IMG/VR virus record: IMGVR_UViG_3300017917_001123
Location: 248,001 to 312,000 of that record
DNA length: 64,000 nucleotides
Strand: one strand, 5' to 3'
Translations under genes and position numbers: made by a program
Notes under the pieces: model-generated
The model's database searches: none
Told to the model about the DNA's origin: nothing
The model's input: only the letters and a program-made list of their open reading frames with translations
In this document: piece after piece, positions 1 to 33,665 of the stretch
Layout: each line of letters starts with the position of its first letter
Position numbering within the stretch: position 1 is the first letter of the stretch

Positions 1-486
1 AGTTAACTTAAATTCAAAGTCTACGTTATTATAACACGAATTGTTAATCCAGTCATTAATTACTTTATAAACATCGGTAAAAGGAATACCTGTATCTGTG
101 CTAACCGCATCTTCTAACATTGAAATGGTTAAATGTAATAGAGTTACTTTTGGATCTAGGCTCAGTGAACGGCAACGTTCTGCTAGCAGTTTCTTTTTAC
201 GGCTGTAGTCGCTCTGTATAAGTTGGTCATACTGCCCTGCGATACTGCCCATAACTACAAGATTAGTTTTACCAGCAAGCGCATCTAGCAAAGGCAGTTG
301 TCCTGCGTTAGTGTTCAAGATTACTATGTCGCAAGTTTCTGCTACTGGTATAACCTTGCTAACGTCTTGCTCTAAGTCTAATCCTGAAAGTCTGCTAGCA
401 CCAATAACTTCGTGCCCGTCCTTAATAAATTGACCAAAGAGGTACTTACCTAGCCCACTAGTGTGGCCTGTAATGAATATTCTCAT
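1..486 (-). CDS. short-chain dehydrogenase/Rossmann-fold protein (3' end outside window)
   Basis: Manual translation from ATG at 486: MRIFITGHTSGLGKYLF..., an N-terminal TGxxxGxG NAD(P)-binding motif; open to position 1; ATGA overlap with the upstream ORF. Not in the ORF track because the stop lies outside the window. Confidence 0.7.
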   Translation of the reverse strand, partial: MRIFITGHTSGLGKYLFGQFIKDGHEVIGASRLSGLDLEQDVSKVIPVAETCDIVILNTNAGQLPLLDALAGKTNLVVMGSIAGQYDQLIQSDYSRKKKLLAERCRSLSLDPKVTLLHLTISMLEDAVSTDTGIPFTDVYKVINDWINNSCYNNVDFEFKLT

Positions 487-1100
487 ATCTGTCCTGTTAT
501 TTTTAATAGAGCAGGCATGTCTTCTCTCTTAACTGAAAAGAACATGTGTACTCTAGGAGTTGTATCTTGGTTCTTAACGCTGTGCATTAATGTTGTATCT
601 AATGCCCAAGAGGATCCATCTGCCGGATAGTGTTCCCAACTTATAGGTTGTCTGTTCTCGTCGTCCCACGTGAAGAAACTCTTAGGAGGACTGTAAATTG
701 GAAAGTGTATGTGCCAAGCATCGTCGGTATGCGACTCGATATAGTTTCCCCCGGGTGTTTCTGATATGCCTAGTCTATAGGCCATTGGGATCTTTTCTAA
801 CAATCGTTCGGCAATACCGAAAACCATATCAGTTCTTTTCTTGCCGTCTGTAAAGTCGCTGGTTAAAACATTCCACGGAGCACATATCTGATCGTCATTC
901 TTTAGATATGTTGTCAAAGCCCAACCGCTGGCCATCTTTGTTAAATCGATGTTTGGATCGTTGTAGGCTTCGCGCTTGATGTATTGCTTCTGTTCTGTCG
1001 CAACCCATTTACGATCAGCAAACTTAGTCTTAATGATATCATAGAACTCTCTTAGTTCGTTAATATCTGCTGTGATGTTTAACTTTATTTGCCTATCCAT
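483..1100 (-). CDS. 2OG-Fe(II) oxygenase / Asp-Asn beta-hydroxylase-like cupin
   Basis: HxD (SHTD), HIHFPI strand, distal H (LMHSVKN) and R (PRVH) in DSBH order. Confidence 0.6.
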   Translation of the reverse strand: MDRQIKLNITADINELREFYDIIKTKFADRKWVATEQKQYIKREAYNDPNIDLTKMASGWALTTYLKNDDQICAPWNVLTSDFTDGKKRTDMVFGIAERLLEKIPMAYRLGISETPGGNYIESHTDDAWHIHFPIYSPPKSFFTWDDENRQPISWEHYPADGSSWALDTTLMHSVKNQDTTPRVHMFFSVKREDMPALLKITGQI

Positions 1101-1141
1101 GAAAATATTTATAGGTGCTCTAGCCTAGCTTAAATATTTGT
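1101..1141. promoter_or_regulatory. back-to-back T4-late-like promoters
   Basis: TATAAATA on minus (1113-1106) 5 nt before ATG 1100; TAAATA on plus (1131-1136) 5 nt before ATG 1142; no SD. Confidence 0.6.
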
Positions 1142-2194
1142 ATGGCCTTCTACAACACAATCAAAGAGTTAGACATAGAACACAGCGCAGTTTGTAATGC
1201 GGCCTGTCCTCAGTGTACAAGAGAGCTTCGCCCCGGAGACTACAGTTGGTTTAACCAAACATGGCTTCCTACAGAGTTTTACCAAGAGCGTATTCCACAA
1301 TATGTATTAGACAACTTAGAAACTATCTTCTTTAGTGGCATGGTAGGCGATCCTTGTGCGGCTCCTAACTTCTTAGAAGTGTGTAAGGTTATTAAAGAAC
1401 GTGCTCCGCATATCCATATTAAGATTAGTACTAATGGAGGTATGCGTAGTCCTGCTTGGTGGGCAGAGCTTGCTAGTATATTAGGGCAAGGTAGTTGGGT
1501 TCGTTTTGCTATTGACGGACTAGCAGACACTAATCATATCTATCGTGTTAATGTAAGTTGGAATAAAGTTGTTGCTAACGTAGATGCGTTTATTAAATCT
1601 GGCGGAGAAGCAGAATGGCAGTATATTGTGTTCAAACACAACGAGCATCAAGTAGAAGAAGCAAAGAAATTATCTGAAGATATGGGCTTTGCTAGATTTG
1701 TTATTAGACGCAGTCATCGCTTCTTGCTAGATGCTCTATTTGAAACACAGTACGTGGGTATCTCTGTTCCTACTAATGACAAATATGTACATCCGTTGAT
1801 TCTACAAAAGAAGAAAGTGTTTAACATTGTAGATGCGTTAAAAGTATCCAACGATAGTAGTGTAACTTGTGAAGTACAAGGACGCAAGAGTGTTTACATA
1901 TCAGCAGATGGTTGGGTGTTTCCTTGTGTATATACAGGAACATGTGTTCACTTAATGAAGACACGCAGTCTACATGACGGTTGGACTAAGTTATGGGAAG
2001 AGCATGGCGGAGATAAGATTAATCTATTAAAGAATGATTGGAACAGCATACTAAACGGTACGTTCTTTAATGGCATACAAGATAGTTGGAATGTAGGATA
2101 TGAGCAAGGACGACTTGCCGCATGTGGGTTATTTTGTAGTCAATCAGCCGCACGTATATTTGATAACAATGTAGACTACGATATAATAGAATGA
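1142..2194 (+). CDS. radical SAM protein with C-terminal twitch/SPASM-like domain
   Basis: CNAACPQC, GDP, ISTNGG, FAIDG; C-terminal C...YISADGWVFPC...ACGLFC. Confidence 0.85.
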   Translation: MAFYNTIKELDIEHSAVCNAACPQCTRELRPGDYSWFNQTWLPTEFYQERIPQYVLDNLETIFFSGMVGDPCAAPNFLEVCKVIKERAPHIHIKISTNGGMRSPAWWAELASILGQGSWVRFAIDGLADTNHIYRVNVSWNKVVANVDAFIKSGGEAEWQYIVFKHNEHQVEEAKKLSEDMGFARFVIRRSHRFLLDALFETQYVGISVPTNDKYVHPLILQKKKVFNIVDALKVSNDSSVTCEVQGRKSVYISADGWVFPCVYTGTCVHLMKTRSLHDGWTKLWEEHGGDKINLLKNDWNSILNGTFFNGIQDSWNVGYEQGRLAACGLFCSQSAARIFDNNVDYDIIE

Positions 2195-3831
2195 CATATC
2201 AAGTAATATTATTTTCTGATACACCAGGAGCCGATTGGTTAAGTAGAGGCTATGGCACCTATCGCCTTGCTACAGAGCTACGTGAAGCGGGCTATTCTGT
2301 GTTGACTGTAGAGTATGCGTCTAGTCTTACTTGGGACAGGTATTGTGAAATTATAGATAGGACAGTAACAGCTGATACATTAGTTGTAGGATTTAGCACT
2401 ACGTGGTTTCCTTATCGCAGTCTTAATAAAATTAATCCTAGATACTCTGTAGGATTCAAGAGCAACAAAGAACATACAGACTTTAAACATGATCAACATC
2501 CATGGTATTACGAAAGTCTAAGCCATTGCTTCAGTCAAGAAGATCCGGACAAGTGGGTTGACTATGTTAAGACACGCAATTCAAAAGTTAAATGTGTTGT
2601 CGGCGGAGCAAAGAGTAACGAGTATGTGTTCGAACCTAAAGTAGATAACATCTTTATTGGCTTTAGTGAAAACATGATGTTGGACTATGTTAACAGCATT
2701 AGTGGTAAAGGACCTAAGCGCATCTTTAATAAGATTATTAACTATGATGTAAAAGCAAGTGATCCTCGTTTTGACTTTAAGAGCTCGTTTACACGTTATG
2801 TAGATACTGACTGTATTGTTCCGGGAGAAATGCTTACTATCGAGTTTGCTCGTGGTTGTATCTTTAACTGTAACTTCTGTAGCTATCCGCATCGCAATCA
2901 GCAGACTGCTGACTTTATCAAATACAAAGAAACTATCCGTGCTGAACTAATGGAAAACTACGAGCGTTGGGGCTGTACTCGTTATATGATTACAGACGAT
3001 ACATTTAACGATGCTACAGAAAAGTTAGTCTACATTAAAGAAGTTATTGAAACATTGCCATTCAAGCCTAAGTTTTGGGCATACTGTCGTATGGACTTGT
3101 TCCATAAGTACCCTGAGCAAATACAGTTAATGAAAGACATTGGTGTTACTGAAGTCTACTACGGTTTAGAAACTTGGCACGATAAAACTGCTAAGGCCAT
3201 TGCCAAAGGTGGTAAGCTACAGAACAAGATCAATGCTATGAAGAAAGCTCGTGAAGTATGGGGTAATGATGTTTATGTTACTGTAGGACTTGTAATGGGT
3301 TTACCACATGATACAGTTCAAAGCGTAACTGATGCTTGCGAATGGTTTAAAGCAGAAGGACACAATTATGTCGATTGGTTTAATGTGAGCTCGTTAACTG
3401 TGTATCCTCCTACAGACAATCAAAAGTACAAGTTCTTTAGTGATATCGAAAAACACTTAGACAAATATGGTTACACATTTCCAGACATTGAAAACAATCC
3501 AATCAATTGGCATCGTGCCGATGACGGAGACATTAATAGTAAAGAACAAGCAGACAAACTAATGGACTATTGGATGAAGGAACTAATGCCTTATCAAAAG
3601 AATAGAAAGCAGATGTGGTTTGCTGGTGCGCTTACTGTAATTGATCCTCGCTTAGACTTTGAAAATTTACTTAAAGCTGAGAAGGATGAATGGAACGATA
3701 TCTTTAGTGCGTTTAAGCCTACTGAATACTATTGGAAGTATGTTAATTACTATTACTGGCCTAAACTGCTAGCGATGCTTGATACATCTGTGCCTAGTCG
3801 TTCATTAGATGTTGCGTGTGTTTCTGGATAA
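2191..3831 (+). CDS. cobalamin-binding-domain radical SAM protein (class B-like)
   Basis: N-terminal YRLATELREAGY..V, GFS, VVGG B12-domain pattern; EFARGCIFNCNFC; DDTFN; GLET; GLPHDT. Confidence 0.8.
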   Translation: MTYQVILFSDTPGADWLSRGYGTYRLATELREAGYSVLTVEYASSLTWDRYCEIIDRTVTADTLVVGFSTTWFPYRSLNKINPRYSVGFKSNKEHTDFKHDQHPWYYESLSHCFSQEDPDKWVDYVKTRNSKVKCVVGGAKSNEYVFEPKVDNIFIGFSENMMLDYVNSISGKGPKRIFNKIINYDVKASDPRFDFKSSFTRYVDTDCIVPGEMLTIEFARGCIFNCNFCSYPHRNQQTADFIKYKETIRAELMENYERWGCTRYMITDDTFNDATEKLVYIKEVIETLPFKPKFWAYCRMDLFHKYPEQIQLMKDIGVTEVYYGLETWHDKTAKAIAKGGKLQNKINAMKKAREVWGNDVYVTVGLVMGLPHDTVQSVTDACEWFKAEGHNYVDWFNVSSLTVYPPTDNQKYKFFSDIEKHLDKYGYTFPDIENNPINWHRADDGDINSKEQADKLMDYWMKELMPYQKNRKQMWFAGALTVIDPRLDFENLLKAEKDEWNDIFSAFKPTEYYWKYVNYYYWPKLLAMLDTSVPSRSLDVACVSG

Positions 3832-5348
3832 AAGAATCTGTTGTACTGTGTTTGTCTAGCATTAGTAGCAACATTCTCACTGCCTAACTTTTTAACCTTG
3901 TAGTTATAGACAACATCTAGGTGTCTTACATCTACTTCATATAAGTCCGATGCTCTTAAGGCAAGCGATCCCTGTAACGAACCTGTTTGATTTACTCCCC
4001 AATCTAATACATAAGGATTCAATCCAAATAGTTTTTCTTTGTGATTGTAAACAGTAAACGCATCTGCCATCTCTCTAACACGAGCATAGCTTAGATTGTC
4101 ATTCTCCCAATTAAGCACTTGATTAACTTGTACTAGGTCGTTATGTCTATAGTTTAAATCTTTAAGCACGTTGGCAGATTCTCTATAACCATAGCTCTTC
4201 CAATCCATCGATATCTTGCTAGGTTTATCAACAAATGTATTAACAGGAATCTCTAATGGGTTTACATCGACTGCTTGCCCTTGCCAATTGTCCACAAGCC
4301 ATTTGAATGTTCTAGTAATAGACTCTTCTGTTTCGTGTGGCAGTCCTAATATAAAAGCTGTAACAGCTCTGTATCCGCCGTGTTCTTCAAAGTATTTGCG
4401 TATGTCTAACAGGCCTTGCTGTAGCTTTTCAGGCTTCATTCCTTTGCCTACAGTCTTACCTGCTTGATGATTAAATGTTTCAATGCCGTAGTAGTGCCCA
4501 TTGAAACCCATGCGTGATGCGTGTTCCCAATCCTGTGGACGTGATGTTAGTAAGTCTGCTCGCATAAATCCACTAAGCCATGGCTTGAACGGTAATTGTT
4601 CTGTAGCATCAGCAAACTTAAGAATCTTTTCACTGCGATCATTAAACGTTTCATCTGCTACAAAATAGTTTGTTGTACCAAATCTATCGTAGGCATCACG
4701 CATTTGTTCTATGTAATCGTCGGCATCTCTAGTATAGTCGCCCTTAACACCTAGCACAGGAAAGTTACAATAGTCACATTCAAATATACAGCCACGAGCA
4801 AACTCTACAGTAAGCCATTCCCATTCCTGGATGTAATCTCTGTCCTCGTATTTGATCATTAAAGACTTCATAGGAAACGCAGGATACAAATGGATAGCAT
4901 CAATAACCTTCTTGCCTTTAGCAAGCCAATTGATATCTAGTTTAATACTACTGCGGGATTCGTTGCCAGCAACAACCTTCATTAACTGTAATACAGCAAG
5001 TTCGCCAAAGCCAAAGATATAATAGTCAAAGTAATTGCTTTCCATTTTAGGGCGAGCCTGACTACCATATAACGTAGTAACATCTGGGTAGGTCTCTTTA
5101 ATCCACTTAAGGAACGACTCCATCTTCTCGTCCCAGTAGCAGAAGAAACAACTAAAGCCTATAATCTTTGTTTCTGCTGTAACCCTAGAGCGTGTGAACT
5201 CTTGTAGTTCTTCGAGTGTAAAATCTGTTGCCCATTCTAATACTTCAACATCCCATCCATGCTCTCGCATATATGTGGCAATGCGATATCCGCCGCCCGG
5301 GCGTCTTAACCACATTGTATGTGTATTGAATATTAATGAGTGTGGCAT
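3753..5348 (-). CDS. cobalamin-binding-domain radical SAM protein (class B-like)
   Basis: YRIATYMREHGWDVEV, GFS; EFARGCIFECDYC; DETFN; GIET; GLPHET. Confidence 0.8.
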   Translation of the reverse strand: MPHSLIFNTHTMWLRRPGGGYRIATYMREHGWDVEVLEWATDFTLEELQEFTRSRVTAETKIIGFSCFFCYWDEKMESFLKWIKETYPDVTTLYGSQARPKMESNYFDYYIFGFGELAVLQLMKVVAGNESRSSIKLDINWLAKGKKVIDAIHLYPAFPMKSLMIKYEDRDYIQEWEWLTVEFARGCIFECDYCNFPVLGVKGDYTRDADDYIEQMRDAYDRFGTTNYFVADETFNDRSEKILKFADATEQLPFKPWLSGFMRADLLTSRPQDWEHASRMGFNGHYYGIETFNHQAGKTVGKGMKPEKLQQGLLDIRKYFEEHGGYRAVTAFILGLPHETEESITRTFKWLVDNWQGQAVDVNPLEIPVNTFVDKPSKISMDWKSYGYRESANVLKDLNYRHNDLVQVNQVLNWENDNLSYARVREMADAFTVYNHKEKLFGLNPYVLDWGVNQTGSLQGSLALRASDLYEVDVRHLDVVYNYKVKKLGSENVATNARQTQYNRFFYPETHATSNERLGTDVSSIASSLGQ

Positions 5349-6856
5349 TATCTGTTTAGTTTCTTGTCAATGTAGCGTCTTGCGATTGAATGTCTAGCTT
5401 GTGCTAGTGTTTCTTTTCCGTAACCCTCTTCCCAACGTACAAATAAATCTTTTCTAGATGCCGACAGGGATTCATCTAATGATAAACCCATACCTGAAGC
5501 GTAGTCTAGTGTATATGGATTTAATTTAAACCAGTCTTCGTTTTCAATGCTTCTCAAGTATTGTGTTGCTAGATCTTTGGCTTTGTCGTAGTCCATGTTG
5601 TCGTTAACCCAGTTTAAATTTGTTGTACTGTGCATAACATTACACTCGAGTGATATATGATCGTATTGATCTGCTGGCTTTTCTCTGTAACCCCACTTGT
5701 GCCAGTCCTGTGCTAACTTGCTAAACTTTTCTGTATATTCGTCAATTGGAATTTCTAAAGGATAGCACTCAATGTTCTCTCCTTGCCAATTGTTACGTAA
5801 CCATTCGGCGCCTTCTTTAAATGTTTCTTCTGTTTCGTAGGGTAGTCCTACGACTAGAGCAATACATCCTCTATAGCGTTGCTGTCCATGCGATTTAAAG
5901 TAATCTCGTACTTCTAAAAGGCCTTCACGTAGTCTGTGCGGATTCATGCCTTTACCGATTGCTTTGGCTGTTGGGTGATTCATGCTCTCAATACCATAGA
6001 AATGCCCTAGCATACCTAAACGTACTAACGCATCCCAGTCTTGCTTACGCGATACTAACAAATCTGCTCGCATAAACCCTGTAAAGAATGGTTTAAAGGG
6101 TAACTTATCAGTTACATCGGCAAACTTTTGAATTTTCTCTGTGCGATCATTAAATGTTTCGTCTGAACAATAGTATAAGGTAGTTCCCCAGCGTTCGTAG
6201 TTTTCTAACAAATGATCGTGATAGTCTTGTGCGTCTCTAGTGTAATCTCCCTTAACACCTAGCACAGGGAAGTTACAATACAAGCATTCAAACATACAAC
6301 CTCGACTAAACTCGCAGGTTAGATATTCCCAGGGCTCGATAAAATCTCTATCTTGGTATTTGATACGCAAGCTCTTCATAGGAAACGCAGGGTAGTAATC
6401 GTTAGCACTAATAAACTTCATACCGCGTCCAAGATATTTTGGATCTAACTTAATTCCGCCTTTTGGTGTATTGCCAACAAAACTAGCAGTTAAGGCTAAT
6501 AGAGCGTGTTCGCCGTAGCCGTGTACGTAATAATCTACTTTAGGATATTGGAATTTAGGTTTGCCATTGCCGCCAACAACAACCCGGACGTGTGGCCACT
6601 TCTGTTTAATATAATCGATAAACAGATTAAACTTCGGATTCCAGTAACTAAAAAAGTATGCGAAGCCAACCCAAACGGTATTCTTTGTAATATTTGTATT
6701 ACAAAACTCTTCAAACTCTTTTTGCTGCCATAGGTCTAGATATTCTACAACTTCAACATCCCAGCCTTCGTCACGTAATATTGTGGCAATTCTATAAGGG
6801 CCGCCAGGCCTGTTAAAGTACATTGTATGACAGTTAAACAATAAACAGTGGTTCAT
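5348..6856 (-). CDS. cobalamin-binding-domain radical SAM protein (class B-like)
   Basis: YRIATILRDEGWDVEV, VVVGG; EFSRGCMFECLYC; DETFN; GIES; GLPYET; close paralog of 3753..5348. Confidence 0.8.
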   Translation of the reverse strand: MNHCLLFNCHTMYFNRPGGPYRIATILRDEGWDVEVVEYLDLWQQKEFEEFCNTNITKNTVWVGFAYFFSYWNPKFNLFIDYIKQKWPHVRVVVGGNGKPKFQYPKVDYYVHGYGEHALLALTASFVGNTPKGGIKLDPKYLGRGMKFISANDYYPAFPMKSLRIKYQDRDFIEPWEYLTCEFSRGCMFECLYCNFPVLGVKGDYTRDAQDYHDHLLENYERWGTTLYYCSDETFNDRTEKIQKFADVTDKLPFKPFFTGFMRADLLVSRKQDWDALVRLGMLGHFYGIESMNHPTAKAIGKGMNPHRLREGLLEVRDYFKSHGQQRYRGCIALVVGLPYETEETFKEGAEWLRNNWQGENIECYPLEIPIDEYTEKFSKLAQDWHKWGYREKPADQYDHISLECNVMHSTTNLNWVNDNMDYDKAKDLATQYLRSIENEDWFKLNPYTLDYASGMGLSLDESLSASRKDLFVRWEEGYGKETLAQARHSIARRYIDKKLNR

Positions 6857-17665: not shown

Positions 17666-17673
17666 TATCAGCA

Positions 17674-23121: not shown

Positions 23122-23146
23122 TAAAAAGAAACGGTTATTCTGTCCT

Positions 23147-26098: not shown

Positions 26099-26196
26099 TT
26101 GTAAATGTAAGGATCCATTTTACGCAGTTTCTTTATTTGCTGTCTGCGTTTATACCATCTATACGGTGTTAGCAACCAATCAAGTATTCTTTTCAT
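26095..26196 (-). CDS. small basic 33-aa protein MKRILDWLLTPYRWYKRRQQIKKLRKMDPYIYK
   Basis: Manual translation; fills the gap between the GT-like gene and the carbamoyltransferase, with an ATGA overlap at 26095-26098. Confidence 0.65.
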   Translation of the reverse strand: MKRILDWLLTPYRWYKRRQQIKKLRKMDPYIYK

Positions 26197-28046: not shown

Positions 28047-29391
28047 GATAAAACTCCGCTAGGTGTGGGAAAGTTGTAGTAAAGTTTGTACCACGTCTGC
28101 GGTCATGTTCTTTAAACCATTCGTAGAAGTCTTTACGTCCCTCTGTTAACTTGTCCTCTGGATAGTGGGTAGTTTCCATATAGTCTACTACACGTCTAAA
28201 CTTTTCGTACTCTAATTCGCTAAACTTTCCTCTAGTCAGTCCCTTCATATGATTCTTAATGAATTCTAAATGGCTGTACATGTAAGGCATAAACTCCTCT
28301 TTTGGTAGTATGTTCATGTCGTACTGTAAAGGTTCTTTGAGATAGGGTGTGTCAAATCGAATACGCTGATACTGTGTTTGGAATATCTTGTTATACTTCT
28401 TACGCCATTCTAGGATCTTTTCTAACAAGCTAGTAAAGCTAGTAACTGCTAGAATGTTAAATGTGATCATAAAGGTAATGGGCAAGTTTGTCTTGGTAAG
28501 GTATATATCTAAGTTCTTTTCCCAAACTGTTAAGTCTAGTCCTGTGCGAGCATACTCCGCAGGCTTACCCCACGTGTCGATACTAGTAAACAGTTTAAAC
28601 TTTTTAATCTTACCTTCTTTGAGCAACTTGTTAACACGTTCTGTTAATCGTTCTACTAGGATAGGCTTTACACCTAAGTTACTGTTTAAATTAAGTTCTA
28701 AATTAGGTTTAGGATTGTTGTCTAACTCGTCAAACAAACGCCACGTGCTTTTTTGTAGCAAAGGTTCGCCGCCTGTGATGCGTAAGATGTTTAGTGTCTT
28801 ACTAACTTCGGGCCACCATTGCCACCATGCGTTAACATACGGGTTATTATCTTCTTCATAGACTTGGAACCAATCGACATCGTTTCTATGATTCTTAACC
28901 ATACTATAAGGGCCGTGATCTCTAATCTCTTTGTAGTAGGCAGAACTATGCTTTGGATGGCAGTAACCGCATTTGAAGTTGCACTCGTTTCCAAAACTTA
29001 TTTCAATGTATTCTGGATTTACGTTAGCCATTGGTGCGTTTTTAATTTCTGCAAAACGCTCGGGTGTATAGATACTAGCATTTCTTTCGTATCTATCGCT
29101 AATGTAGTCTGGACCCATTGCTTCGATGTTCCAGCAATATTGGCAACCACTTGGCTTTTCTCCCTGTAGCATAGCGTAACGCTCATCACGCTTTTGATTT
29201 GTGTTGTGTAATGCGCTAGGATTAATAGCTAATTCCAACAAAGGAACTACATGCGGTCTTGGATGATAGCAACTATGTGTCTGCCCTGTTTGTAAGTAGA
29301 TAGTTGTGTGATGCCACTTAGCCATACAAAATGTAGGGCTAATTTCATTCATTATAGGAATAATCTTTTTAATGCGATCTACGTCAGACAC
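28030..29391 (-). CDS. radical SAM protein with N-terminal twitch domain
   Basis: FC.AKW...HSCYH...GCQYCW; CNFKCGYC; ITGGEP; LNSN; SID. Confidence 0.85.
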   Translation of the reverse strand: MSDVDRIKKIIPIMNEISPTFCMAKWHHTTIYLQTGQTHSCYHPRPHVVPLLELAINPSALHNTNQKRDERYAMLQGEKPSGCQYCWNIEAMGPDYISDRYERNASIYTPERFAEIKNAPMANVNPEYIEISFGNECNFKCGYCHPKHSSAYYKEIRDHGPYSMVKNHRNDVDWFQVYEEDNNPYVNAWWQWWPEVSKTLNILRITGGEPLLQKSTWRLFDELDNNPKPNLELNLNSNLGVKPILVERLTERVNKLLKEGKIKKFKLFTSIDTWGKPAEYARTGLDLTVWEKNLDIYLTKTNLPITFMITFNILAVTSFTSLLEKILEWRKKYNKIFQTQYQRIRFDTPYLKEPLQYDMNILPKEEFMPYMYSHLEFIKNHMKGLTRGKFSELEYEKFRRVVDYMETTHYPEDKLTEGRKDFYEWFKEHDRRRGTNFTTTFPHLAEFYRACSV

Positions 29392-30259
29392 GATTTAACC
29401 TATAAAATTCGTCAAACGTATGAACTACGTACCCACTAACATCAGCGTCAAGAACAGGAACATCGATAAAGTTTATCGACTGTGCTTTAAACTTTTTAAT
29501 CAAATCGTCTGCGCCAAATCGTTCAATTGCTTTAAACATGGTAGTTAGTGTTTCGAAGTCGCGGACGTTAGTAACATCCCAGTCTGTACACATTGTTAGA
29601 TAAACACCTTGCCATGCTCCGGCAATAGCCCATAGACCGTTTTCTACGTGTGCGCCAAGGGTAAGCCATTGCTTTAATCTATGTAGGTTCTCCCACCAAA
29701 TAACTTCTTTGGCAGGTTTGCCCTGTTCTACTCTAACGCCTTTGTCTAAACACATCTTAACACCTTCGCGAAACCCTGCTCGCCATGCTTGAAGCGGTGT
29801 TGTGTTTATAATAGTATCGCTGTATGAAACTGTGAGTGGATAGTACCCTGCTTCCCAACAGAAGTCTACTTGGCCTTTGTCTTCTTCTGCGGCTTCGTGT
29901 GTTTTCATGTTAAGCACAAAGTCCTTGCGCCAAACTTTAAGACTGCCGTTTCCGTAGCGTAGTCCGTTAATACAGTTACGTCCTGGCCAATTGAACGCCT
30001 GTGCGTTTGGATATTGGTCTAAGTCTAATTGTAAATCCCAAAACTTAGGATTAACAATGTTGTCAGCATCAACGGTAACAAACCATTCTGTATTGCTTAG
30101 GTTAGCAGCCGCCTTGTGGCAAGCATCACTGCCCTTAACACCGTGAACACGTTCGACCCACGGCGCATCCTGTAACAGTTTAGCATAGTTCATTTCTGCG
30201 TTAGGTTCATCGTACGAGATAAACACACAGTCTAATTCATTAATTTTTAGCAACGACAT
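29384..30259 (-). CDS. glycosyltransferase-like (GT-A) protein
   Basis: FISYDEPNAE, GSDACHKAAA, FVTVDAD (DxD); start re-chosen at ATG 30259. Confidence 0.55.
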   Translation of the reverse strand: MSLLKINELDCVFISYDEPNAEMNYAKLLQDAPWVERVHGVKGSDACHKAAANLSNTEWFVTVDADNIVNPKFWDLQLDLDQYPNAQAFNWPGRNCINGLRYGNGSLKVWRKDFVLNMKTHEAAEEDKGQVDFCWEAGYYPLTVSYSDTIINTTPLQAWRAGFREGVKMCLDKGVRVEQGKPAKEVIWWENLHRLKQWLTLGAHVENGLWAIAGAWQGVYLTMCTDWDVTNVRDFETLTTMFKAIERFGADDLIKKFKAQSINFIDVPVLDADVSGYVVHTFDEFYRLNRV

Positions 30260-30803
30260 AAACAGAAATATCCTTAGGACCTTGATAAGGTAACGACATA
30301 GTTCCTTTTGTAATAAAAGGTTCAAGAGTAATCTCAAAGCTATCGTATATAGCGAATGGATTACCTTTGCGAGTTACATATAGATTGTACACTTTATCTT
30401 TAACTAAAGTCAATCGGTCGATGTTCTCTTGATTGGTAATTGTATCAAAGTAATTAGGATCGTAAATTAAGGTTAAACCTTTATCAGTTGCTTCGGTAAT
30501 AATTCTTGCGCTGGCAATGAAATTTTCAAAACTACGTAATGCTCTAACAACTTCGTCTTCTGTGTTCAAGACGATCTGACTCTCAAAAATTTCTTTTCGT
30601 CTAAATCCTACAATGTTACTATCAACTATTAACGGATAGTATTCGCTAGGTATTTTCTTTAAGGTAAAGAACGGTTCCAATAGACTGAAATCGTCTACTG
30701 GTAAGACTGTATATCCTTCTGCCTCTTCAAATTCAAACCCGATGCCCTTGATAACTAGCGTATCGGATTCAAACTTTACATAACGTCTTTGTACTTGTTC
30801 CAT
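30240..30803 (-). CDS. hypothetical protein
   Basis: 187-aa ORF overlapping both neighbours in the operon. Confidence 0.6.
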   Translation of the reverse strand: MEQVQRRYVKFESDTLVIKGIGFEFEEAEGYTVLPVDDFSLLEPFFTLKKIPSEYYPLIVDSNIVGFRRKEIFESQIVLNTEDEVVRALRSFENFIASARIITEATDKGLTLIYDPNYFDTITNQENIDRLTLVKDKVYNLYVTRKGNPFAIYDSFEITLEPFITKGTMSLPYQGPKDISVYVVAKN

Positions 30804-31639
30804 ACTAATGACTCTAATGTGTTGATGAAGTTATCTGTAATAAGATCCTTCTTTGTGTAATGTAGGATATCGGACTGAGCGTATGGCCCAATCTTTATAT
30901 TTAGGTCCCCGTCATAGTAAAACGGAATACGTTCTGTCCATTCGTAGTCTGTTGCGCCAAGCCCTTGACTTCTGCCCTTCATGTGTGTAAAGCGAGGAAA
31001 TGGTACAGCAGGATTACTCATATCTTCTACCATATCTAACATCTTAGCAGTTAGCGCACAGGCTTCGTCTGTTGGGATGCTGTCAAACTTGTAATCCTCT
31101 AATTGTTCTTTCCACAGCTCTGGATAATCAGTTAGTGCTTCTAGTACACGAAAAAACTTTGTAGTTTCTCTACTTTGTTTGAAGTATAACCAGCCACTGT
31201 AGAAGTCTGGCAATTTGTTTTGATCAACGACATATCTGTAATAACGATCTGTCATTGTTTCTCCTCTGAACGTCATAGGGCGGGTAGCAACATACAAGTC
31301 GTGTTTTCTAACAAACGGAAGCCAATGACTAACATCGCTTAGGAACAGCAGGTCGCTATCTAAGAATATAGTTTCTTTATAAGGCGTGTGCTCATAGGCT
31401 CTGCTTCTGGCATTCATTCCTTTAGGGCCATCGTAATTAATGACGGTATCAAATACCCATTTTAGTTTTAAGTTTTGAACAACCTTTGGAGTAGTTGTTG
31501 CGATGCTTACAGAATTAAATCCCTGCGGTTGTGTTAGTTTAATTGTTAGCGCAGTAGCATAGGCTAATCTAAGATAGTCTGTAGTCTGCGTGTTGTTGGC
31601 TATCATAAAGTAGCCTAGGTTAAACTCTTTTGAAATCAT
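30776..31639 (-). CDS. nucleotide-diphospho-sugar transferase (GT8-like)
   Basis: YLRLAYATALTI, TPYKETIFLDSDLLF (DxD), YSGWLYF, FTHMK, LHY. Confidence 0.65.
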   Translation of the reverse strand: MISKEFNLGYFMIANNTQTTDYLRLAYATALTIKLTQPQGFNSVSIATTTPKVVQNLKLKWVFDTVINYDGPKGMNARSRAYEHTPYKETIFLDSDLLFLSDVSHWLPFVRKHDLYVATRPMTFRGETMTDRYYRYVVDQNKLPDFYSGWLYFKQSRETTKFFRVLEALTDYPELWKEQLEDYKFDSIPTDEACALTAKMLDMVEDMSNPAVPFPRFTHMKGRSQGLGATDYEWTERIPFYYDGDLNIKIGPYAQSDILHYTKKDLITDNFINTLESLVWNKYKDVM

Positions 31640-32436
31640 TTGACTAACTCCATGAGCTTTGGTAACTTATCTAGCAAGTCGAATTTATTCATGTAGTGTA
31701 TGTCTTGCCCTTGCGTTTTAACAAGCGTTTCTCCACACATTAGGACTGTCAGTGTTTGATCTTTAACCTGTAGAATCTCATCTTTGTCTGTAAAGATTAT
31801 AGGACTTGGTAAGGCAGTATAAAACTTATCAAGACCAAACCCGCCCATAGTATGACAAGCAACACTAAATGCGTAATCGTTTCTAAATCTTCTTGTATCG
31901 AACTTATAGAGTGCGCCGTAGTAACTCCAGTTTTCTCTAACATGGTCAACAAGTTCAAACAGGGCTTTAACTTCAGGTGTCTTGTTAAAAATAATGTTTG
32001 TAGCCCAGAGCATAGGAATACTAGCAGGGTCTAGCATTAGTGCGCCTAGTGAATTGCCCAGCATGTCGTTCATACCTTCGCAAATCATAAAGTCTCTATC
32101 TGCTTCTAAGTAAGGCTTCAAGCAACTGCTTTGAACTAAGAAATCGCTGTCAATCACTAGTGTTCTGTCATAAGGGCTTAGTTCGTATGCCGAACTTCTG
32201 TTGGTGTTCTTAAACGAAATGGTCTTACCGGCAAGTGTTCTAGTATTGTCTGTTTCCACAGTAGTAACAATCAGTCCATCAAATACGCCCACATCTGTTG
32301 CGTCCAAGGTCTTGCTGTCTGTAACAAGCGTGACAGGAATGTTAAGATGTTTCTTAACAAGGCCTGCGGCTAAAACAGCTTGAGGGCCGTATGCTATGTC
32401 GCCATCAAAGGCGAAAATGACGCACCCTGTTGTCAT
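31636..32436 (-). CDS. nucleotide-diphospho-sugar transferase (GT8-like)
   Basis: SPYDRTLVIDSDFLV (DxD), LWATNIIF, RNDYAFS, IHYMNK. Confidence 0.65.
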   Translation of the reverse strand: MTTGCVIFAFDGDIAYGPQAVLAAGLVKKHLNIPVTLVTDSKTLDATDVGVFDGLIVTTVETDNTRTLAGKTISFKNTNRSSAYELSPYDRTLVIDSDFLVQSSCLKPYLEADRDFMICEGMNDMLGNSLGALMLDPASIPMLWATNIIFNKTPEVKALFELVDHVRENWSYYGALYKFDTRRFRNDYAFSVACHTMGGFGLDKFYTALPSPIIFTDKDEILQVKDQTLTVLMCGETLVKTQGQDIHYMNKFDLLDKLPKLMELVK

Positions 32437-32774
32437 AGGTCCACCAGTTTGGCTGCGGTTCGTTTTTGTTTGATTTGACTGTAGTCTGTCATGTATCTGT
32501 TTGTTACTTCAAAATACACACCTACAATCTTGTTGAAGAAATCCTGTAGGTTTTCAATTTCTACAGGATATTCGTTGTCGTCTAAGATAACGGCAGATTC
32601 ATAATCTTTAATTGAACTGATAAAACCAATCAGTTCTCTGCCTACAGTGAAAATGCCTCCGTTGTGTGCGATAACAAGTTCAGCAAGTGCTTTGTCTTTT
32701 AAGCGTTGTCTTTCTATTCCTAGTGTCTGTCTATAGTTTGCGTGTTCGATTGCTTGTTTAAGCCGATCATCCAT
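32433..32774 (-). CDS. hypothetical protein
   Basis: 113-aa ORF with SD (GAGG) and ATGA overlap. Confidence 0.6.
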   Translation of the reverse strand: MDDRLKQAIEHANYRQTLGIERQRLKDKALAELVIAHNGGIFTVGRELIGFISSIKDYESAVILDDNEYPVEIENLQDFFNKIVGVYFEVTNRYMTDYSQIKQKRTAAKLVDL

Positions 32775-32783
32775 GTGTGCCTC

Positions 32784-33665
32784 TTAGTAGTTGTTTGGTT
32801 TTGTCTGTGAATAAGGATAGTAGATTGCTACGTTATGATATATGTTACCATTAACATAGTCCGGACCGCCTGCGATGCCCGGGTGATCATCGACATAATA
32901 CACGGTCATAGTAATAGCAGTTCTTTGTTTAACGTCTGTGTTATTATGCCACAGATATATTTGTACATAGTTTGCTGTATAAGGACTTTCTGGACTATAA
33001 ATTCTAAATGCTTCGTTAGCGCCTGTGTTTGATGTTCCATAAACACCACCTGATCCCCAGCTGTTGTAGAATGTTCCGCCCCAGGCTGCGCCCGATTGGA
33101 ACATCCCCGTACGAGTCAGAACAATAGTTCCCATGTTTGCTAGCAAGTTTGACCATGTTGCGTTTTGGCTAGTGCCGTCGCCCCCTGATCGACTTCCTGT
33201 AAATTGTAGTCTGCCACCGCCATTCCAGAAACCCCTGTATGCGGCATTGTCTGCCCAAGTAACTGACACAGATCCTAATGGAGTTAATACTCCGTTCCAT
33301 GCTCCGCCATACCCATATGACGGGCCAGCAACATAAGCTAGCTGACCTGTACTGATAGCACCCCTATTAGAGTAAGCAGTATCAACACGAGCAGAGATTG
33401 TTGACAAATCAGTTGAAGTAATAATCGCCGTATCGGCTCTTGTTGTAAGGTCTGAGTTAGCACCTGTTTGTAATAGGTATGCTTTGTTAACGTCGGCTCT
33501 TAGATTGTTCCATTGAACACCGGTAATTTTTTCATTATCGGCTACCGTTGCCGCAGAGTAAGTTGTGTTATAGCCAAGATCGTTAGTAGTACCATCTGGT
33601 GTGCTTAACACACTACGCATTTTAAGAATAACTGGGTTCCAGTCTTCGTTTTGAATGATTGCCAT
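32784..33665 (-). CDS. putative virion structural protein
   Basis: G/S/T/N-rich; NLRADV..A...QTG, RGFWNGGG...F.G...G.G.SQ..TW; paralog of the next gene. Confidence 0.5.
   Translation of the reverse strand: MAIIQNEDWNPVILKMRSVLSTPDGTTNDLGYNTTYSAATVADNEKITGVQWNNLRADVNKAYLLQTGANSDLTTRADTAIITSTDLSTISARVDTAYSNRGAISTGQLAYVAGPSYGYGGAWNGVLTPLGSVSVTWADNAAYRGFWNGGGRLQFTGSRSGGDGTSQNATWSNLLANMGTIVLTRTGMFQSGAAWGGTFYNSWGSGGVYGTSNTGANEAFRIYSPESPYTANYVQIYLWHNNTDVKQRTAITMTVYYVDDHPGIAGGPDYVNGNIYHNVAIYYPYSQTKPNNY

What the first reader, a model, noticed from the sequence alone, without database searches (positions are those of the whole stretch)
1..33665. A ~33-kb, apparently late-expressed phage tailoring-enzyme island with 10 radical-SAM enzymes
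Seen: about 40 tightly packed genes that are almost all chemistry. There are 10 CxxxCxxC radical-SAM proteins of at least four architectures and about 10 HxD...H...R oxygenase/cupins. There are also an SDR, a class-III aminotransferase, two SAM methyltransferases, an SGNH-like enzyme, two kinase-fold proteins, a carbamoyltransferase and about five GT-like proteins. Fe-S assembly genes sit immediately downstream, and no replication or nucleotide-pool genes are interspersed. Established: such enzyme inventories typify natural-product, lipid-tailoring or glycan-tailoring clusters. T4-like phage islands usually hold 2OG oxygenases and GTs, but I know of none described with this radical-SAM depth. 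Inference: T4-late-like TAAATA boxes front most transcription units, so the product is probably made late. That fits a multi-step decoration (glycan or PTM) of virion proteins better than early DNA-base modification. Host lipid/envelope remodelling or a small molecule are alternatives.
Basis: partly seen in the sequence, partly recalled or inferred. Interest (0 to 1): 0.85.

Follow-up and report, generated by a model that had tools for sequence, protein, structure and literature searches.

The report
Radical-SAM and glycosyltransferase island, jumbo phage
A 331-kb uncultured aquatic phage carries a roughly 50-kb accessory island with at least 15 radical-SAM enzymes, sugar-transferring and sugar-tailoring enzymes and its own iron-sulfur assembly genes; islands of this kind have been reported before, but their product is still unknown and is most likely a tailored glycan on fibre-like virion proteins.

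Summary
There are exactly 10 CX3CX2C radical-SAM (rSAM) proteins in 1-33665, plus cupin/2OG oxygenases, two methyltransferases, a class-III aminotransferase and a carbamoyltransferase. IscA/IscU genes lie directly downstream.

The island is cut by the window edge. Five more rSAM genes lie within 8 kb to the left, giving at least 15. Chemistry genes continue rightwards to about 41.1 kb.

The island is composite. Window 26180-34569 is a conserved module: two fibre-like beta-sandwich proteins, two GT8-like and two GT-A glycosyltransferases, and an N-terminal-twitch rSAM. The rSAM has more than 5000 metagenomic homologues at about 75% identity. The module is collinear in Ralstonia jumbo phage RsoM2USA, next to its tail genes. 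The remaining ~26 kb is variable and is shared only with one close relative.

TAAATA is a real promoter-like signal. It also fronts the tail-fibre operon, whereas the ligase and exonuclease genes have sigma-70-type promoters. Late expression is therefore plausible but unproven.

The claim that no island of this rSAM depth has been described is wrong. T4-like marine viral genomes with 12 rSAM genes plus Fe-S genes, and pelagimyophage host-recognition clusters with GT8 and rSAM cassettes, are published.

New here: the closest cellular counterparts are tandem rSAM arrays in Bdellovibrionota chromosomes. Best guess (0.4): glycan synthesis and tailoring for fibre-like virion proteins.

The parts
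1..483 (-). 5' part of a 199-aa ORF that runs off the window's left edge; weak Rossmann/SDR-like N-terminus. To its left, outside the window, lie five more rSAM genes.
   Evidence: adh_short/Epimerase, E 0.006; L087 4658-5713, 6981-8336, 9127-10023, 10001-11113, 10983-12455 all carry CX3CX2C
483..1100 (-). Asp/Asn beta-hydroxylase-like cupin oxygenase
   Evidence: PF05118, E 3e-8; HxD...H...R motif
1142..2194 (+). Radical-SAM enzyme (350 aa); a paralogue lies left of the window
2191..6856 (.). Three paralogous B12-binding-type rSAM enzymes (2191-3831 +, 3753-5348 -, 5348-6856 -); probable methyltransferase class, substrate unknown
   Evidence: best NCBIfam hits to B12-rSAM families, all far below their cut-offs
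6853..7557 (-). DUF6473/SGNH-like protein (weak)
7613..12943 (.). Mixed tailoring block: cupin-motif paralogues 7613 and 10708; 2OG oxygenase 8167; SAM methyltransferase 8829 (-); Zn-ribbon rSAM 9558; Asp/Asn-hydroxylase-like 11225; 11718; 12332 (paralogue of 17635)
12895..14061 (-). Class-III (PLP) aminotransferase
   Evidence: PF00202, E 8.5e-48
14058..17674 (-). Three tandem N-terminal-twitch rSAM paralogues (14058, 15184, 16367); they form a phage-only clade
   Evidence: (NF033640, 242-284 bits against a cut-off of 170)
17635..24630 (.). Variable block: 2OG-like 17635; unknowns 18215, 18783, 19610; methyltransferase 20296; 2OG oxygenase 20978 (-); unknown 21611; rSAM 22153; unknowns 23147, 23845
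   Evidence: shared only with L005
24623..26098 (-). Carbamoyltransferase (NodU/CmcH-type two-domain enzyme)
   Evidence: PF02543 + PF16861, E 1e-43 and 3e-51; homologues sit beside 28030-type rSAMs in other loci
26180..26860 (-). GT-A glycosyltransferase, paralogue of 29384 (conserved module)
26853..28046 (-). 397-aa conserved protein; possible glycosyltransferase (motif only, not verified)
   Evidence: no PDB match; present in 57 related loci
28030..29391 (-). Conserved N-terminal-twitch rSAM, the core of the module
   Evidence: NF033640, 313 bits; 5236 homologues, top ones 73-84% identical; 597 IMG/VR stretches; RsoM2USA, 35%
29384..30337 (-). GT-A glycosyltransferase with invariant DxD (D90, D92)
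   Evidence: pLDDT 87; RmlT E 8e-5; PBCV-1 A64R 2e-4
30240..30803 (-). 187-aa conserved protein of unknown function (a same-sized gene, RsoM2USA ORF351, occupies this slot; no sequence match found)
30776..32436 (-). Two paralogous GT8-like (glycogenin-like) glycosyltransferases (30776-31639, 31636-32436)
   Evidence: hhalign 98.5%; glycogenin E 2.3e-5 through the DxD; Pfam PF01501 not hit
32433..32774 (-). 113-aa conserved helical protein (homologue of RsoM2USA ORF354)
32784..34569 (-). Two paralogous Cys-free, Gly/Ser/Thr/Asn-rich proteins (helical N-terminus + beta-sandwich); non-enzymatic and fibre/receptor-binding-like. In relatives the same ~300-aa unit is fused into 557-779-aa proteins.
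   Evidence: pLDDT 89; no PDB match; RsoM2USA ORF355
34581..35670 (.). Fe-S assembly genes: IscA (34581-34901, -, first gene of the leftward run), IscU (34968-35366, +), IscA (35344-35670, +)
35679..41106 (+). Right-hand continuation: flavin halogenase-like 35679; 2OG-like 36926; (DNA ligase 37940, not part of the island); 2OG 39469; NAD-dependent sugar epimerase/dehydratase 40306
1106..1136 (.). Back-to-back TAAATA boxes 11 nt before the ATGs of 483 (-) and 1142 (+). Similar boxes occur at 7573/7596, 9528/9548, 17679, 21597, 23115, 34914/34934 and 41679.

Best explanation
What it is. The region is part of a hypervariable accessory island of at least ~50 kb (at least 13 kb beyond the window's left edge to about window 41.1 kb). 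It lies next to the tail-fibre genes of a 331-kb uncultured aquatic myovirus-like jumbo phage. It is the same kind of region as the 'host recognition cluster' of pelagimyophages and cyanomyophages.

Two layers.
1. A conserved module at window 34569-26180 on the minus strand. It holds two fibre-like beta-sandwich proteins, a 113-aa protein, two GT8-like transferases, a 187-aa protein, a GT-A transferase, an N-terminal-twitch rSAM, a 397-aa protein and a second GT-A transferase.
2. A variable mosaic of tailoring cassettes. These include more N-twitch rSAMs, B12-type rSAMs, cupin/2OG oxygenases, SAM methyltransferases, a PLP aminotransferase, a carbamoyltransferase, and epimerase and nucleotidyltransferase genes.

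Proposed mechanism (inferred).
- Sugar-nucleotide precursors are made or altered by the epimerase, aminotransferase, rSAM and B12-rSAM enzymes.
- The four or five soluble glycosyltransferases transfer them in the cytoplasm onto fibre-like virion proteins.
- The glycan is further decorated by O-carbamoylation, methylation and hydroxylation.
- The phage's own IscA/IscU, co-transcribed with the module, load the at least 15 [4Fe-4S] enzymes.
- The TAAATA promoter class shared with the fibre operon expresses everything together with the structural genes.

Shown versus inferred. Shown: the gene families, the paralogy, the module's conservation and neighbourhoods, and the promoter-motif statistics. 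Inferred: the glycan product, the virion acceptor and the timing.
For: - Families and motifs.
- GT-A fold of 29384/26180. Hits include the chlorovirus capsid-glycosylating A64R and the peptide S-glycosyltransferases SunS/ThuS.
- GT8-like 31636/30776.
- The module is conserved in 60-84 related loci, and its rSAM has thousands of metagenomic homologues.
- Eight genes are collinear in RsoM2USA, directly after the structural ORF356 and the tail-sheath ORF359.
- In relatives the module lies beside fibre-like proteins. L002 has 651-aa and 619-aa proteins with tail-fibre PHROG hits. L172 has a 3844-aa protein with a Peptidase_S74 fibre chaperone domain. All 31 loci with at least 8 kb of upstream sequence hold a same-strand ORF of at least 450 aa upstream.
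- The 32784 family is non-enzymatic, is fused into longer proteins in relatives, and ORF355, its RsoM2USA member, matches the N-terminal region of the 619-aa fibre-like protein of L002 (36% over 72 residues).
- Sugar-nucleotide enzymes sit next to the rSAM in relatives (epimerase, UDP-glucose dehydrogenase) and here (epimerase 40306; cytidylyltransferase/mannose-6-P-isomerase fusion to the left).
- No integral membrane protein among about 80 proteins.
- TAAATA is shared with the fibre operon, while ligase and exonuclease use sigma-70-like promoters.
- IscA heads the module's co-directional gene run.
Against: - No glycan, acceptor or expression timing was observed.
- None of the rSAM enzymes reaches any equivalog cut-off, so no reaction can be assigned.
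- GT8 membership fails Pfam, and 26853 has no detectable fold relative.
- Asp/Asn beta-hydroxylase-like cupins, B12-rSAMs and twitch/SPASM rSAMs are equally typical of direct protein or peptide modification.
- The published reading for the analogous pelagimyophage islands is modification of the host O-chain (PMC7029224).
- The variable part may consist of unrelated cassettes with different substrates.
- In the window itself the module is separated from the fibre operon by about 7 kb that includes a DNA ligase and an HNH endonuclease.
Confidence: 0.4

Rival explanations
1. Host-envelope remodelling. The glycosyltransferases and tailoring enzymes alter the host's O-antigen or capsule during infection, to block superinfection by competing phages. 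This was proposed for pelagimyophage host-recognition clusters.
For: - A published interpretation of analogous islands rich in GT8 and LPS-type genes (PMC7029224).
- GT8, UDP-glucose dehydrogenase, epimerase and carbamoyltransferase are typical of surface-polysaccharide loci.
- Hypervariability fits surface-antigen diversification.
Against: - No integral membrane component at all: no Wzx/Wzy, GtrA/Gtr-type, polyprenyl-phosphate transferase or ABC exporter.
- The promoter class is shared with structural genes rather than with the sigma-70-type units.
- The module is tightly linked to fibre-like proteins, including in a soil Ralstonia phage.
Confidence: 0.2
2. Mosaic of unrelated cassettes. The 'island' is a hypervariable dumping ground in which several independent small cassettes act on different substrates, with no common product. 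Candidate cassettes are the GT/rSAM module, an rSAM triad, a B12-rSAM trio, and oxygenase paralogues.
For: - Only 26180-34569 is widely conserved; the rest is shared with one close relative.
- Other contigs carry the same families in different orders.
- There are about 14 short transcription units on alternating strands.
- The window's N-twitch paralogues fall into four separate orthogroups.
Against: - The same combination of families recurs together in many phage contigs and in Bdellovibrionota chromosomes.
- The units share a promoter motif and Fe-S supply genes.
Confidence: 0.25
3. Direct radical and oxidative post-translational modification of virion proteins or of a peptide (RiPP-like), with the rSAM, B12-rSAM and Asp/Asn-hydroxylase-like enzymes acting on protein side chains rather than on sugars.
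For: - Twitch/SPASM and B12 rSAMs give weak hits to peptide maturases (RiPP C-methyltransferase, ApyD, WgkB, CefB).
- There are three Asp_Arg_Hydrox-type cupins.
- A flavin halogenase-like gene and a subtilase lie nearby.
Against: - All hits are far below the family cut-offs.
- No RRE domain was found.
- Coding density is 92%, with intergenic gaps of 19-82 nt, which leaves no room for precursor peptide genes.
- The best-conserved rSAM is sandwiched between glycosyltransferases.
Confidence: 0.15
4. A diffusible small molecule or lipid (aminoglycoside- or nucleoside-like natural product, or modified membrane lipid) made during infection.
For: - The enzyme mix resembles aminoglycoside-type clusters: B12-rSAM, twitch rSAM, aminotransferase, carbamoyltransferase, methyltransferases.
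- The best, though weak, NCBIfam hits of the B12-rSAMs and of 9558 are to lipid-modifying families.
Against: - No scaffold-forming enzyme (PKS, NRPS, cyclase, inositol or 2-deoxy-scyllo-inosose synthase), no exporter and no resistance gene was detected.
- The island is linked to fibre genes.
Confidence: 0.08
5. DNA hypermodification of the phage genome.
For: - rSAM, PLP enzymes, glycosyltransferases and carbamoyl chemistry occur in known phage DNA modification pathways (own knowledge).
- A weak QueC-like PP-loop ATPase lies left of the window.
Against: - No hydroxymethylase, DpdA/TGT, nucleotide kinase or other nucleotide-pool domain in the island.
- The promoter class is shared with structural genes, not replication genes.
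- QueC-like genes also sit inside the Bdellovibrionota rSAM arrays.
Confidence: 0.05

Closest known systems
Host recognition cluster (HRC) of pelagimyophages and the hypervariable structural-region island of cyanomyophages (Zaragoza-Solas et al. 2020, PMC7029224)
   Same: Both are large non-syntenic islands beside tail-fibre genes in aquatic myoviruses. Both hold GT8-type glycosyltransferases, sugar-nucleotide genes, Asp/Asn beta-hydroxylase-like genes and rSAM cassettes that differ between close relatives.
   Different: - The host genome here is a 331-kb contig, whereas the published pelagimyophage-type genomes are much smaller (the T4-like one cited here is 183 kb).
- rSAM density is far higher: at least 15.
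- The VrlC and gp14 landmarks were not identified.
- The published interpretation is host O-chain modification, whereas the absence of membrane parts here points to a cytoplasmic acceptor.
T4-like marine environmental viral genomes with Fe-S assembly genes and many rSAM genes (Nishimura et al. 2017, PMC5332604; TARA_ERS488813_N000010, 183 kb, 12 rSAM + A-type carrier)
   Same: A-type carrier and/or IscU genes are encoded together with a large set of rSAM genes. The suggested logic is the same: the virus supplies cluster assembly for its own Fe-S enzymes.
   Different: That report is an inventory across a whole genome. Here at least 15 rSAMs are clustered in about 45 kb, IscA is co-directional with the conserved module, and two IscA plus IscU flank it.
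Virus-encoded virion glycosylation (chlorovirus PBCV-1 A64R and partners; mycobacteriophage capsid/tail-tube glycosylation operons; own knowledge)
   Same: Soluble virus-encoded GT-A enzymes act in the cytoplasm on structural proteins. The 29384 model matches the A64R structure (2p72, E 2e-4).
   Different: No rSAM enzymes are known in those systems, and no glycan has been demonstrated here.
NCBIfam NF033640 'twitch domain-containing radical SAM protein' (N_Twi_rSAM)
   Same: Four window proteins, and two more to the left by homology, are full-length members above the curated cut-off.
   Different: The family has no characterised reaction that I could find, so membership gives no function.
Tandem rSAM arrays in Bdellovibrionota chromosomes
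   Same: The orthogroups match: N-twitch rSAMs, homologues of 22153 and 1142, GT-A of the 29384/26180 type, and carbamoyltransferase. Protein identity is 40-51%.
   Different: These are cellular, sit on Mb-scale contigs and have no fibre-like 32784-family gene nearby in the loci read. Their function is equally unknown.

Membership tests
Radical SAM superfamily (PF04055) | CX3CX2C cluster motif | tested here: met
   10 of 10 in the window, 5 of 5 to the left
Radical SAM superfamily (PF04055) | Profile score above the gathering threshold | tested here: met
   9 of 10 above 29.5 bits. 28030 scores 23 bits but reaches 313 bits on NF033640
Radical SAM superfamily (PF04055) | GGE-type SAM-binding motif | tested here: met
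   G207 G208 E209 P210 are invariant in 12 diverse N-twitch members
NF033640 N-terminal-twitch rSAM | Full-length match above the curated cut-off (170 bits) | tested here: met
   14058: 242 bits; 15184: 254; 16367: 284; 28030: 313
Class B (cobalamin-dependent) rSAM methyltransferases | N-terminal B12-binding domain plus rSAM core | tested here: inconclusive
   PF02310 is above threshold only in 5348 (35.9 against 32.1). It is below threshold in 3753 and not detected in 2191, although the three are paralogues
Class B (cobalamin-dependent) rSAM methyltransferases | Membership of a characterised equivalog (PhpK, HpnR, Fom3/GenK-like, RiPP C-methyltransferase) | tested here: not met
   Best scores are 47-61 bits against cut-offs of 280-750
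GT8 (glycogenin-like retaining glycosyltransferases) | DxD motif in a GT-A N-terminal domain alignable with GT8 structures | tested here: met
   Profile A8 hits only glycogenin-1/2, E 2.3e-5, residues 12-114, with the DxD aligned
GT8 (glycogenin-like retaining glycosyltransferases) | Pfam PF01501 match | tested here: not met
   0 of 30 members at E <= 1
GT-A fold glycosyltransferases (GT2-like) for 29384/26180 | GT-A Rossmann-like fold with DxD | tested here: met
   Model pLDDT 87. Foldseek probability 0.99-1.0 to RmlT, A64R, K4CP, SpsA, TarS and SunS. D90 and D92 are invariant
Pelagimyophage/cyanomyophage host recognition cluster | Large non-syntenic island containing glycosyltransferases and rSAM cassettes next to tail-fibre genes | tested here: met
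Pelagimyophage/cyanomyophage host recognition cluster | Position between VrlC and neck gene gp14 of a T4-like genome | not tested
   Neither landmark was identified in the stretches read.
T4-type late promoter | TATAAATA octamer at -10 | tested here: not met
   2 sites against 6.6 expected. Only the hexamer TAAATA is enriched
T4-type late promoter | gp55/gp33-type late sigma and co-activator in the genome | not tested
   The contig outside the fetched stretches could not be scanned
RiPP biosynthetic cluster | Precursor peptide gene and RRE-type recognition domain | tested here: not met
   Intergenic gaps are 19-82 nt, coding density is 92%, and there are no RRE Pfam hits
Phage O-antigen modification (gtrABC-like) or Wzx/Wzy polysaccharide loci | Integral membrane flippase, polymerase or transferase | tested here: not met
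   A hydropathy scan finds no multi-span protein among about 80 proteins
ISC Fe-S assembly system | IscU scaffold and A-type carrier | tested here: met
   NifU_N 187 bits; Fe-S_biosyn 67 and 68 bits
ISC Fe-S assembly system | Cysteine desulfurase IscS, HscBA, ferredoxin | tested here: not met
   None in the window or the left extension. The phage presumably relies on the host for these

The most novel reading that the evidence does not exclude
Arrays of N-terminal-twitch rSAM enzymes working with GT-A glycosyltransferases form one previously unrecognised surface-decoration system. It would be shared, orthogroup by orthogroup, between abundant aquatic and soil myoviruses and predatory Bdellovibrionota. 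Both would use it to build chemically unusual, fast-diversifying glycans (or glycan-like modifications) on the fibre-type adhesins with which they recognise Gram-negative prey. The conserved 28030-type enzyme would then be a new sugar- or glycoprotein-directed radical reaction.
Probability: 0.12. Interest if true: 0.85.

Novelty: new member of a known kind. Interest (0 to 1): 0.55.

Why it matters
- The 28030-type rSAM and its glycosyltransferase neighbours are among the most conserved accessory genes of a very abundant group of freshwater and marine phages. There are thousands of near-identical homologues in metagenomes, yet no member of the family has an assigned reaction.
- If the module decorates receptor-binding fibres, it adds a chemical layer to phage host-range evolution that sequence-based host-range prediction ignores.
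- A phage that brings IscU and IscA for at least 15 of its own [4Fe-4S] enzymes is also a notable draw on host iron and sulfur.
- A cultivated carrier exists, so the question is experimentally open now. Ralstonia phage RsoM2USA holds the module as ORF348-355.
- The shared orthogroups with Bdellovibrionota suggest either a gene-flow route or a common functional need between two kinds of bacterial predators.

Tried and rejected
- DNA similarity to 50,697 phage records. There was no megablast or blastn hit for 1-24000 or for 41958-49181, so no cultured close relative exists.
- PHROGs on the module proteins gave nothing useful.
- Profile searches of the single-family alignments A1-A4 against PDB sequences were not significant. 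Only the pooled GT8-like profile A8 became significant.
- Pfam on 30 GT8-like members gave no GT8 hit.
- Foldseek of the 32784 model against the PDB gave no match. BFVD returned only uncharacterised phage proteins.
- hhalign between the GT8-like and GT-A families was not significant.
- Iterative local HMM searches for the unknown ~200-aa proteins only recovered their own paralogues. 'Kinase-fold' proteins could not be confirmed.
- tRNA and Rfam scans found nothing. The repeat scan found only paralogue echoes.
- A giant-virus (NCLDV) origin was considered because of the AT-rich start-proximal promoter motif and the contig size. I rejected it on three grounds: tail-type PHROG hits, the phage-type ligase and exonuclease, and the module shared with a myovirus.
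I rebuilt it without that row and used the RsoM2USA sequences only in local scripts.
- One look-up of a gammaproteobacterial homologue failed, probably because the start codon was not on record.

Full report
**Source and setting.** The window is positions 248,004-312,003 of IMGVR_UViG_3300017917_001123, a 331,570-bp viral contig. G+C content is about 40% and there are no tRNAs. It has no nucleotide-level relative among 50,697 deposited phage genomes. Several features mark it as a tailed phage:
- tail-fibre-type and virion-protein PHROG hits at 41958-54156;
- a phage-type ATP-dependent DNA ligase (PHROG 114, E 6e-103) and an exonuclease;
- a structural protein 37% identical to one in Synechococcus myoviruses.

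**Checking the observation.** All-frame ORF listing gives about 38 tightly packed genes in 1-33665.

Radical-SAM (rSAM) enzymes:
- Exactly ten proteins carry CX3CX2C, and they are the same ten that hit Pfam Radical_SAM.
- Three are mutually paralogous B12-binding-type enzymes (2191, 3753, 5348).
- Four have the auxiliary-cluster domain at the N-terminus and pass the curated NCBIfam cut-off for NF033640, 'twitch domain-containing radical SAM protein' (14058, 15184, 16367, 28030).
- One has an N-terminal zinc ribbon (9558).
- Two are plain (1142, 22153).

Other enzymes:
- Profile-supported oxygenases are 483, 11225, 8167, 20978 and, weakly, 17635. 12332 is a paralogue of 17635. Three further ~200-aa proteins (7613, 10708, 11718) show the HxD...H...R/K pattern.
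- The aminotransferase, both methyltransferases, the carbamoyltransferase and the IscA/IscU/IscA trio are clear.
- I could not confirm the 'kinase-fold' proteins.
- The 'SDR' and 'SGNH' calls rest on weak hits.

**The island is bigger than the finding.** Fetching the contig to the left of the window (L001, L087, L088) shows the island is truncated by the window edge.
- Five more CX3CX2C enzymes lie within 8 kb of window position 1, two of them of the N-twitch type.
- Beyond them lie another Asp/Asn-hydroxylase-like cupin, a QueC-like PP-loop ATPase, a GDSL-like protein, a cytidylyltransferase/mannose-6-phosphate-isomerase fusion, a cell-wall hydrolase and a further 2OG oxygenase.
- To the right, after the Fe-S genes, come a flavin halogenase-like gene, two 2OG-type genes and an NAD-dependent sugar epimerase/dehydratase. 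A DNA ligase interrupts this stretch.
- The true unit therefore spans roughly 50 kb and holds at least 15 rSAM genes.

**The island is composite.** I compared every window protein with 84 related loci, fetched through the 28030 rSAM. Only window 26180-34569 is widely conserved. Everything to its left is shared with a single close relative, L005, whose proteins are 56-94% identical.

The conserved rSAM itself is extraordinarily common:
- 5236 database proteins passed E 1e-3 among the capped candidates, and the best 120 are all 73-84% identical.
- At least 597 IMG/VR stretches encode it, from freshwater and marine samples.
- The only cultured carrier is the 344-kb Ralstonia jumbo myovirus RsoM2USA, at 35% identity.
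- In RsoM2USA, ORF355-348 occupy the same order as window 32784 to 26180; six are sequence homologues, ORF351 matches 30240 only in size and position, and no 26853 counterpart is present.
- That block sits directly after the MS-confirmed structural protein ORF356 and the tail-sheath ORF359 (PMC8504454).

**What the module proteins are.**
- The 29384/26180 family was folded with a 23-row alignment (pLDDT 87). It is a GT-A glycosyltransferase. Foldseek gives probability 0.99-1.0 to RmlT, the chlorovirus capsid-glycosylating A64R, chondroitin polymerase, SpsA, TarS and the peptide S-glycosyltransferases SunS/ThuS. A DxD motif is invariant.
- 31636 and 30776 are paralogues (hhalign 98.5%). Their pooled profile matches only glycogenin-1/2 in the PDB (E 2.3e-5), from the N-terminus through the DxD. 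No member reaches Pfam Glyco_transf_8. I therefore call them GT8-like rather than GT8 members.
- 26853 is conserved, but I found no relative of known fold.
- 32784 and 33670 are Cys-free, Gly/Ser/Thr/Asn-rich paralogues. The confident model (pLDDT 89) is a helical N-terminus plus a beta-sandwich. It has no PDB match and only uncharacterised phage relatives.
- In several relatives the same ~300-residue unit is fused into 557-779-aa proteins. ORF355, the family's RsoM2USA member, shares an N-terminal stretch (36% over 72 residues) with the 619-aa fibre-like protein of L002. That modularity is what one expects of fibre or receptor-binding proteins, not of enzymes.

**Neighbourhoods.**
- In L002 the module follows 651-aa and 619-aa proteins with tail-fibre PHROG hits. 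An epimerase, a 2OG oxygenase and UDP-glucose dehydrogenase follow it.
- In L172 it lies between GT7/laminin-G fusions and UDP-glucose dehydrogenase plus a carbamoyltransferase, next to a 3844-aa protein with the Peptidase_S74 fibre-chaperone domain.
- All 31 loci with at least 8 kb of upstream sequence have a same-strand ORF of at least 450 aa upstream of the module.
- In the window, the fibre-like operon (41691-54930) starts about 7 kb from the module.

**Similar islands elsewhere.** Other large viral contigs carry the same families in other orders.
- 6-8 rSAM genes per ~21-kb stretch read, with Asp/Asn-hydroxylase-like, 2OG or TauD oxygenases.
- Some stretches add methyltransferases, a class-III aminotransferase, halogenase-like genes and GT8.
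- A recurrent triad consists of an N-twitch rSAM of about 410 aa, an rSAM of about 300 aa and an rSAM of about 365 aa.

This is therefore a recurrent, shuffled gene pool, not a one-off.

**Promoters and timing.**
- The T4 late octamer TATAAATA is not enriched.
- The hexamer TAAATA is the rarest of the 15 permutations of its letters (32 sites against 48-114). Half of its sites lie within 70 nt upstream of a same-strand start.
- The same holds in 79 related loci: 818 sites, 17.6% within 40 nt of an ATG, against 2-5% for most of the other permutations and 10% for the overlapping ATAAAT.
- It fronts 10 of about 14 island transcription units, both Fe-S units, the fibre operon (41679) and several downstream structural-region genes.
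- The DNA ligase instead has a perfect TTGACA-17-TATAAT promoter, and the exonuclease a near-perfect one.
- The island thus shares a promoter class with structural genes and differs from at least two replication-type genes. This supports late co-expression but does not prove it.
- In seven cases the box ends only 4-11 nt before the ATG, which suggests very short or absent leaders.

**Membrane test.** A hydropathy scan of about 80 proteins from the window and the left extension finds no integral membrane protein. The only hydrophobic feature of note is a signal anchor on the cell-wall hydrolase. The parts that O-antigen or capsule modification normally needs (Wzx/Wzy, Gtr-type, polyprenyl-phosphate transferases, exporters) are absent. 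This favours a cytoplasmic acceptor.

**Cellular counterparts.**
- A scan of one genome per prokaryotic species with an N-twitch rSAM alignment returned 76 loci. By my count most of them (about 55) come from Bdellovibrionota MAGs, several on 0.8-3.7-Mb contigs.
- These carry tandem arrays of 5-9 rSAM genes. They also hold homologues of window 22153 (43-48% identity), of the 1142 family (about 40%), of the GT-A pair (37-46%) and of the carbamoyltransferase.
- In a FastTree of 84 sequences, three of the four orthogroups that hold the window's N-twitch paralogues group with Bdellovibrionota sequences, with support of 99-100. The 14058/15184/16367 group is phage-only.
- Some 'bacterial' hits are evidently mis-binned phage contigs: the Fischerella, Pelagibacterales and Flavobacteriaceae bins.

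**Literature.**
- Nishimura et al. 2017 described T4-like marine viral genomes that encode A-type carriers and/or IscU together with rSAM genes. One genome had 12 rSAMs. They suggested that the viral Fe-S assembly genes work within Fe-S-related processes involving both host and virally encoded proteins (PMC5332604).
- Zaragoza-Solas et al. 2020 defined the pelagimyophage host recognition cluster. It is a hypervariable island with a mean size of 44.6 kb in the structural region, holding fibres, GT8 glycosyltransferases, LPS-type genes and rSAM cassettes. They interpreted it as modifying the host O-chain (PMC7029224).
- Multi-rSAM Campylobacter myoviruses have been known since 2010 (title seen).
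- I found no paper that assigns a reaction to NF033640 enzymes or that describes the GT/rSAM/fibre-like module or the Bdellovibrionota arrays. This is absence within the searched library only.

**Interpretation.** The best-supported reading is a glycan synthesis and tailoring system whose transferases act in the cytoplasm on fibre-like virion proteins, with a fast-evolving set of tailoring cassettes. It is powered by phage-encoded Fe-S assembly and expressed with the structural genes (confidence 0.4). The rivals are:
- host-envelope remodelling (0.2);
- an unconnected mosaic of cassettes (0.25);
- direct protein or peptide modification (0.15);
- a small molecule or lipid (0.08);
- DNA modification (0.05).

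None of the rSAM reactions can be named, because every equivalog match is far below its cut-off.

**Verdict.** The kind of island is already in the literature, so I file it as a new, unusually rSAM-dense member of a known kind. Two sub-findings are worth follow-up: the conserved N-twitch rSAM/GT-A/fibre-like module, which has a cultivated carrier, and its orthologous arrays in predatory bacteria.

Noticed in passing
L094-L169 (genome contigs), e.g. L098/L120 (OZ220490.1, 1.89 Mb), L143 (804 kb), L114 (3.0 Mb): Bdellovibrionota chromosomes carry tandem arrays of 5-9 rSAM genes: N-twitch paralogues plus homologues of window 22153, 1142, the GT-A pair and the carbamoyltransferase. Three phage orthogroups group with these sequences.
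   Followed up: partly
window 1106-1136, 9523-9553, 17674-17679, 41610-41615, 51948-51953: TAAATA boxes end only 4-11 nt before the start codon, with no Shine-Dalgarno sequence between them. This suggests leaderless or near-leaderless transcripts. In divergent intergenic regions the two boxes lie back-to-back (1100/1142, 9518/9558) or crossed (7557/7613, 34901/34968).
   Followed up: partly
window 37882-37910 (+) and 55898-55926 (-): Two perfect sigma-70 consensus promoters (TTGACA-17-TATAAT). The first is 30 nt before the DNA ligase gene. The second points at small minus-strand ORFs near 55347-55616.
   Followed up: no
window 32784-34569; L038 2173-4215, L026 3353-5692, L015 3395-5347: The 32784/33670 family has a confidently predicted fold (helical N-terminus + beta-sandwich) with no PDB counterpart. 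In relatives it occurs free-standing or fused as the C-terminal ~300 residues of 650-779-aa proteins.
   Followed up: partly
window 35679-36929; L170 18022-19248: A tryptophan-halogenase-like flavoprotein (PF04820, E 8e-31) sits next to the Fe-S genes. A homologue lies among rSAM genes in a 273-kb phage contig.
   Followed up: no
window 47613-49181: A subtilase (Peptidase_S8; PHROG 9158, E 2e-80) is embedded between the 1291-aa and 916-aa fibre-region proteins.
   Followed up: no
window 41075-41608 (-): An HNH endonuclease gene with its own TAAATA box sits between the epimerase and the fibre operon. It may be a mobile insertion.
   Followed up: no
window 52534-54156: A virion structural protein is 36-37% identical to one in Synechococcus phages S-B05, S-B43 and S-T4. 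In S-T4 that gene lies between the small and large terminase genes. This may be a hint of a cyanobacterial host or of gene exchange with cyanomyoviruses.
   Followed up: partly
L087 6380-7087, 2427-3185, 1486-2157 (5.4-11 kb left of the window): A QueC-like PP-loop ATPase (weak, also found inside the Bdellovibrionota arrays), a cytidylyltransferase/mannose-6-phosphate-isomerase-cupin fusion, and a SleB-type cell-wall hydrolase with a signal anchor.
   Followed up: partly
L097, L113, L108/L172, L164: Contigs binned as Fischerella, Pelagibacterales, Flavobacteriaceae and Legionellales MAGs carry the phage GT/rSAM module. L172 also has a 3844-aa Peptidase_S74 fibre protein. They look like mis-binned phage contigs and could hint at hosts.
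   Followed up: no
L091 17055-19173; L092 3268-6482; L170 12386-15579; L087 6981-11113: A recurrent rSAM triad (an N-twitch rSAM of about 410-450 aa, one of about 300 aa and one of about 365 aa) is conserved across several 266-356-kb phage contigs and in the window's left extension.
   Followed up: partly
window 37940-39229: The ATP-dependent DNA ligase finds its best deposited-phage matches (32-35% identity) in SPO1-like and SP-10-like Bacillus phages rather than in T4-like phages.
   Followed up: no
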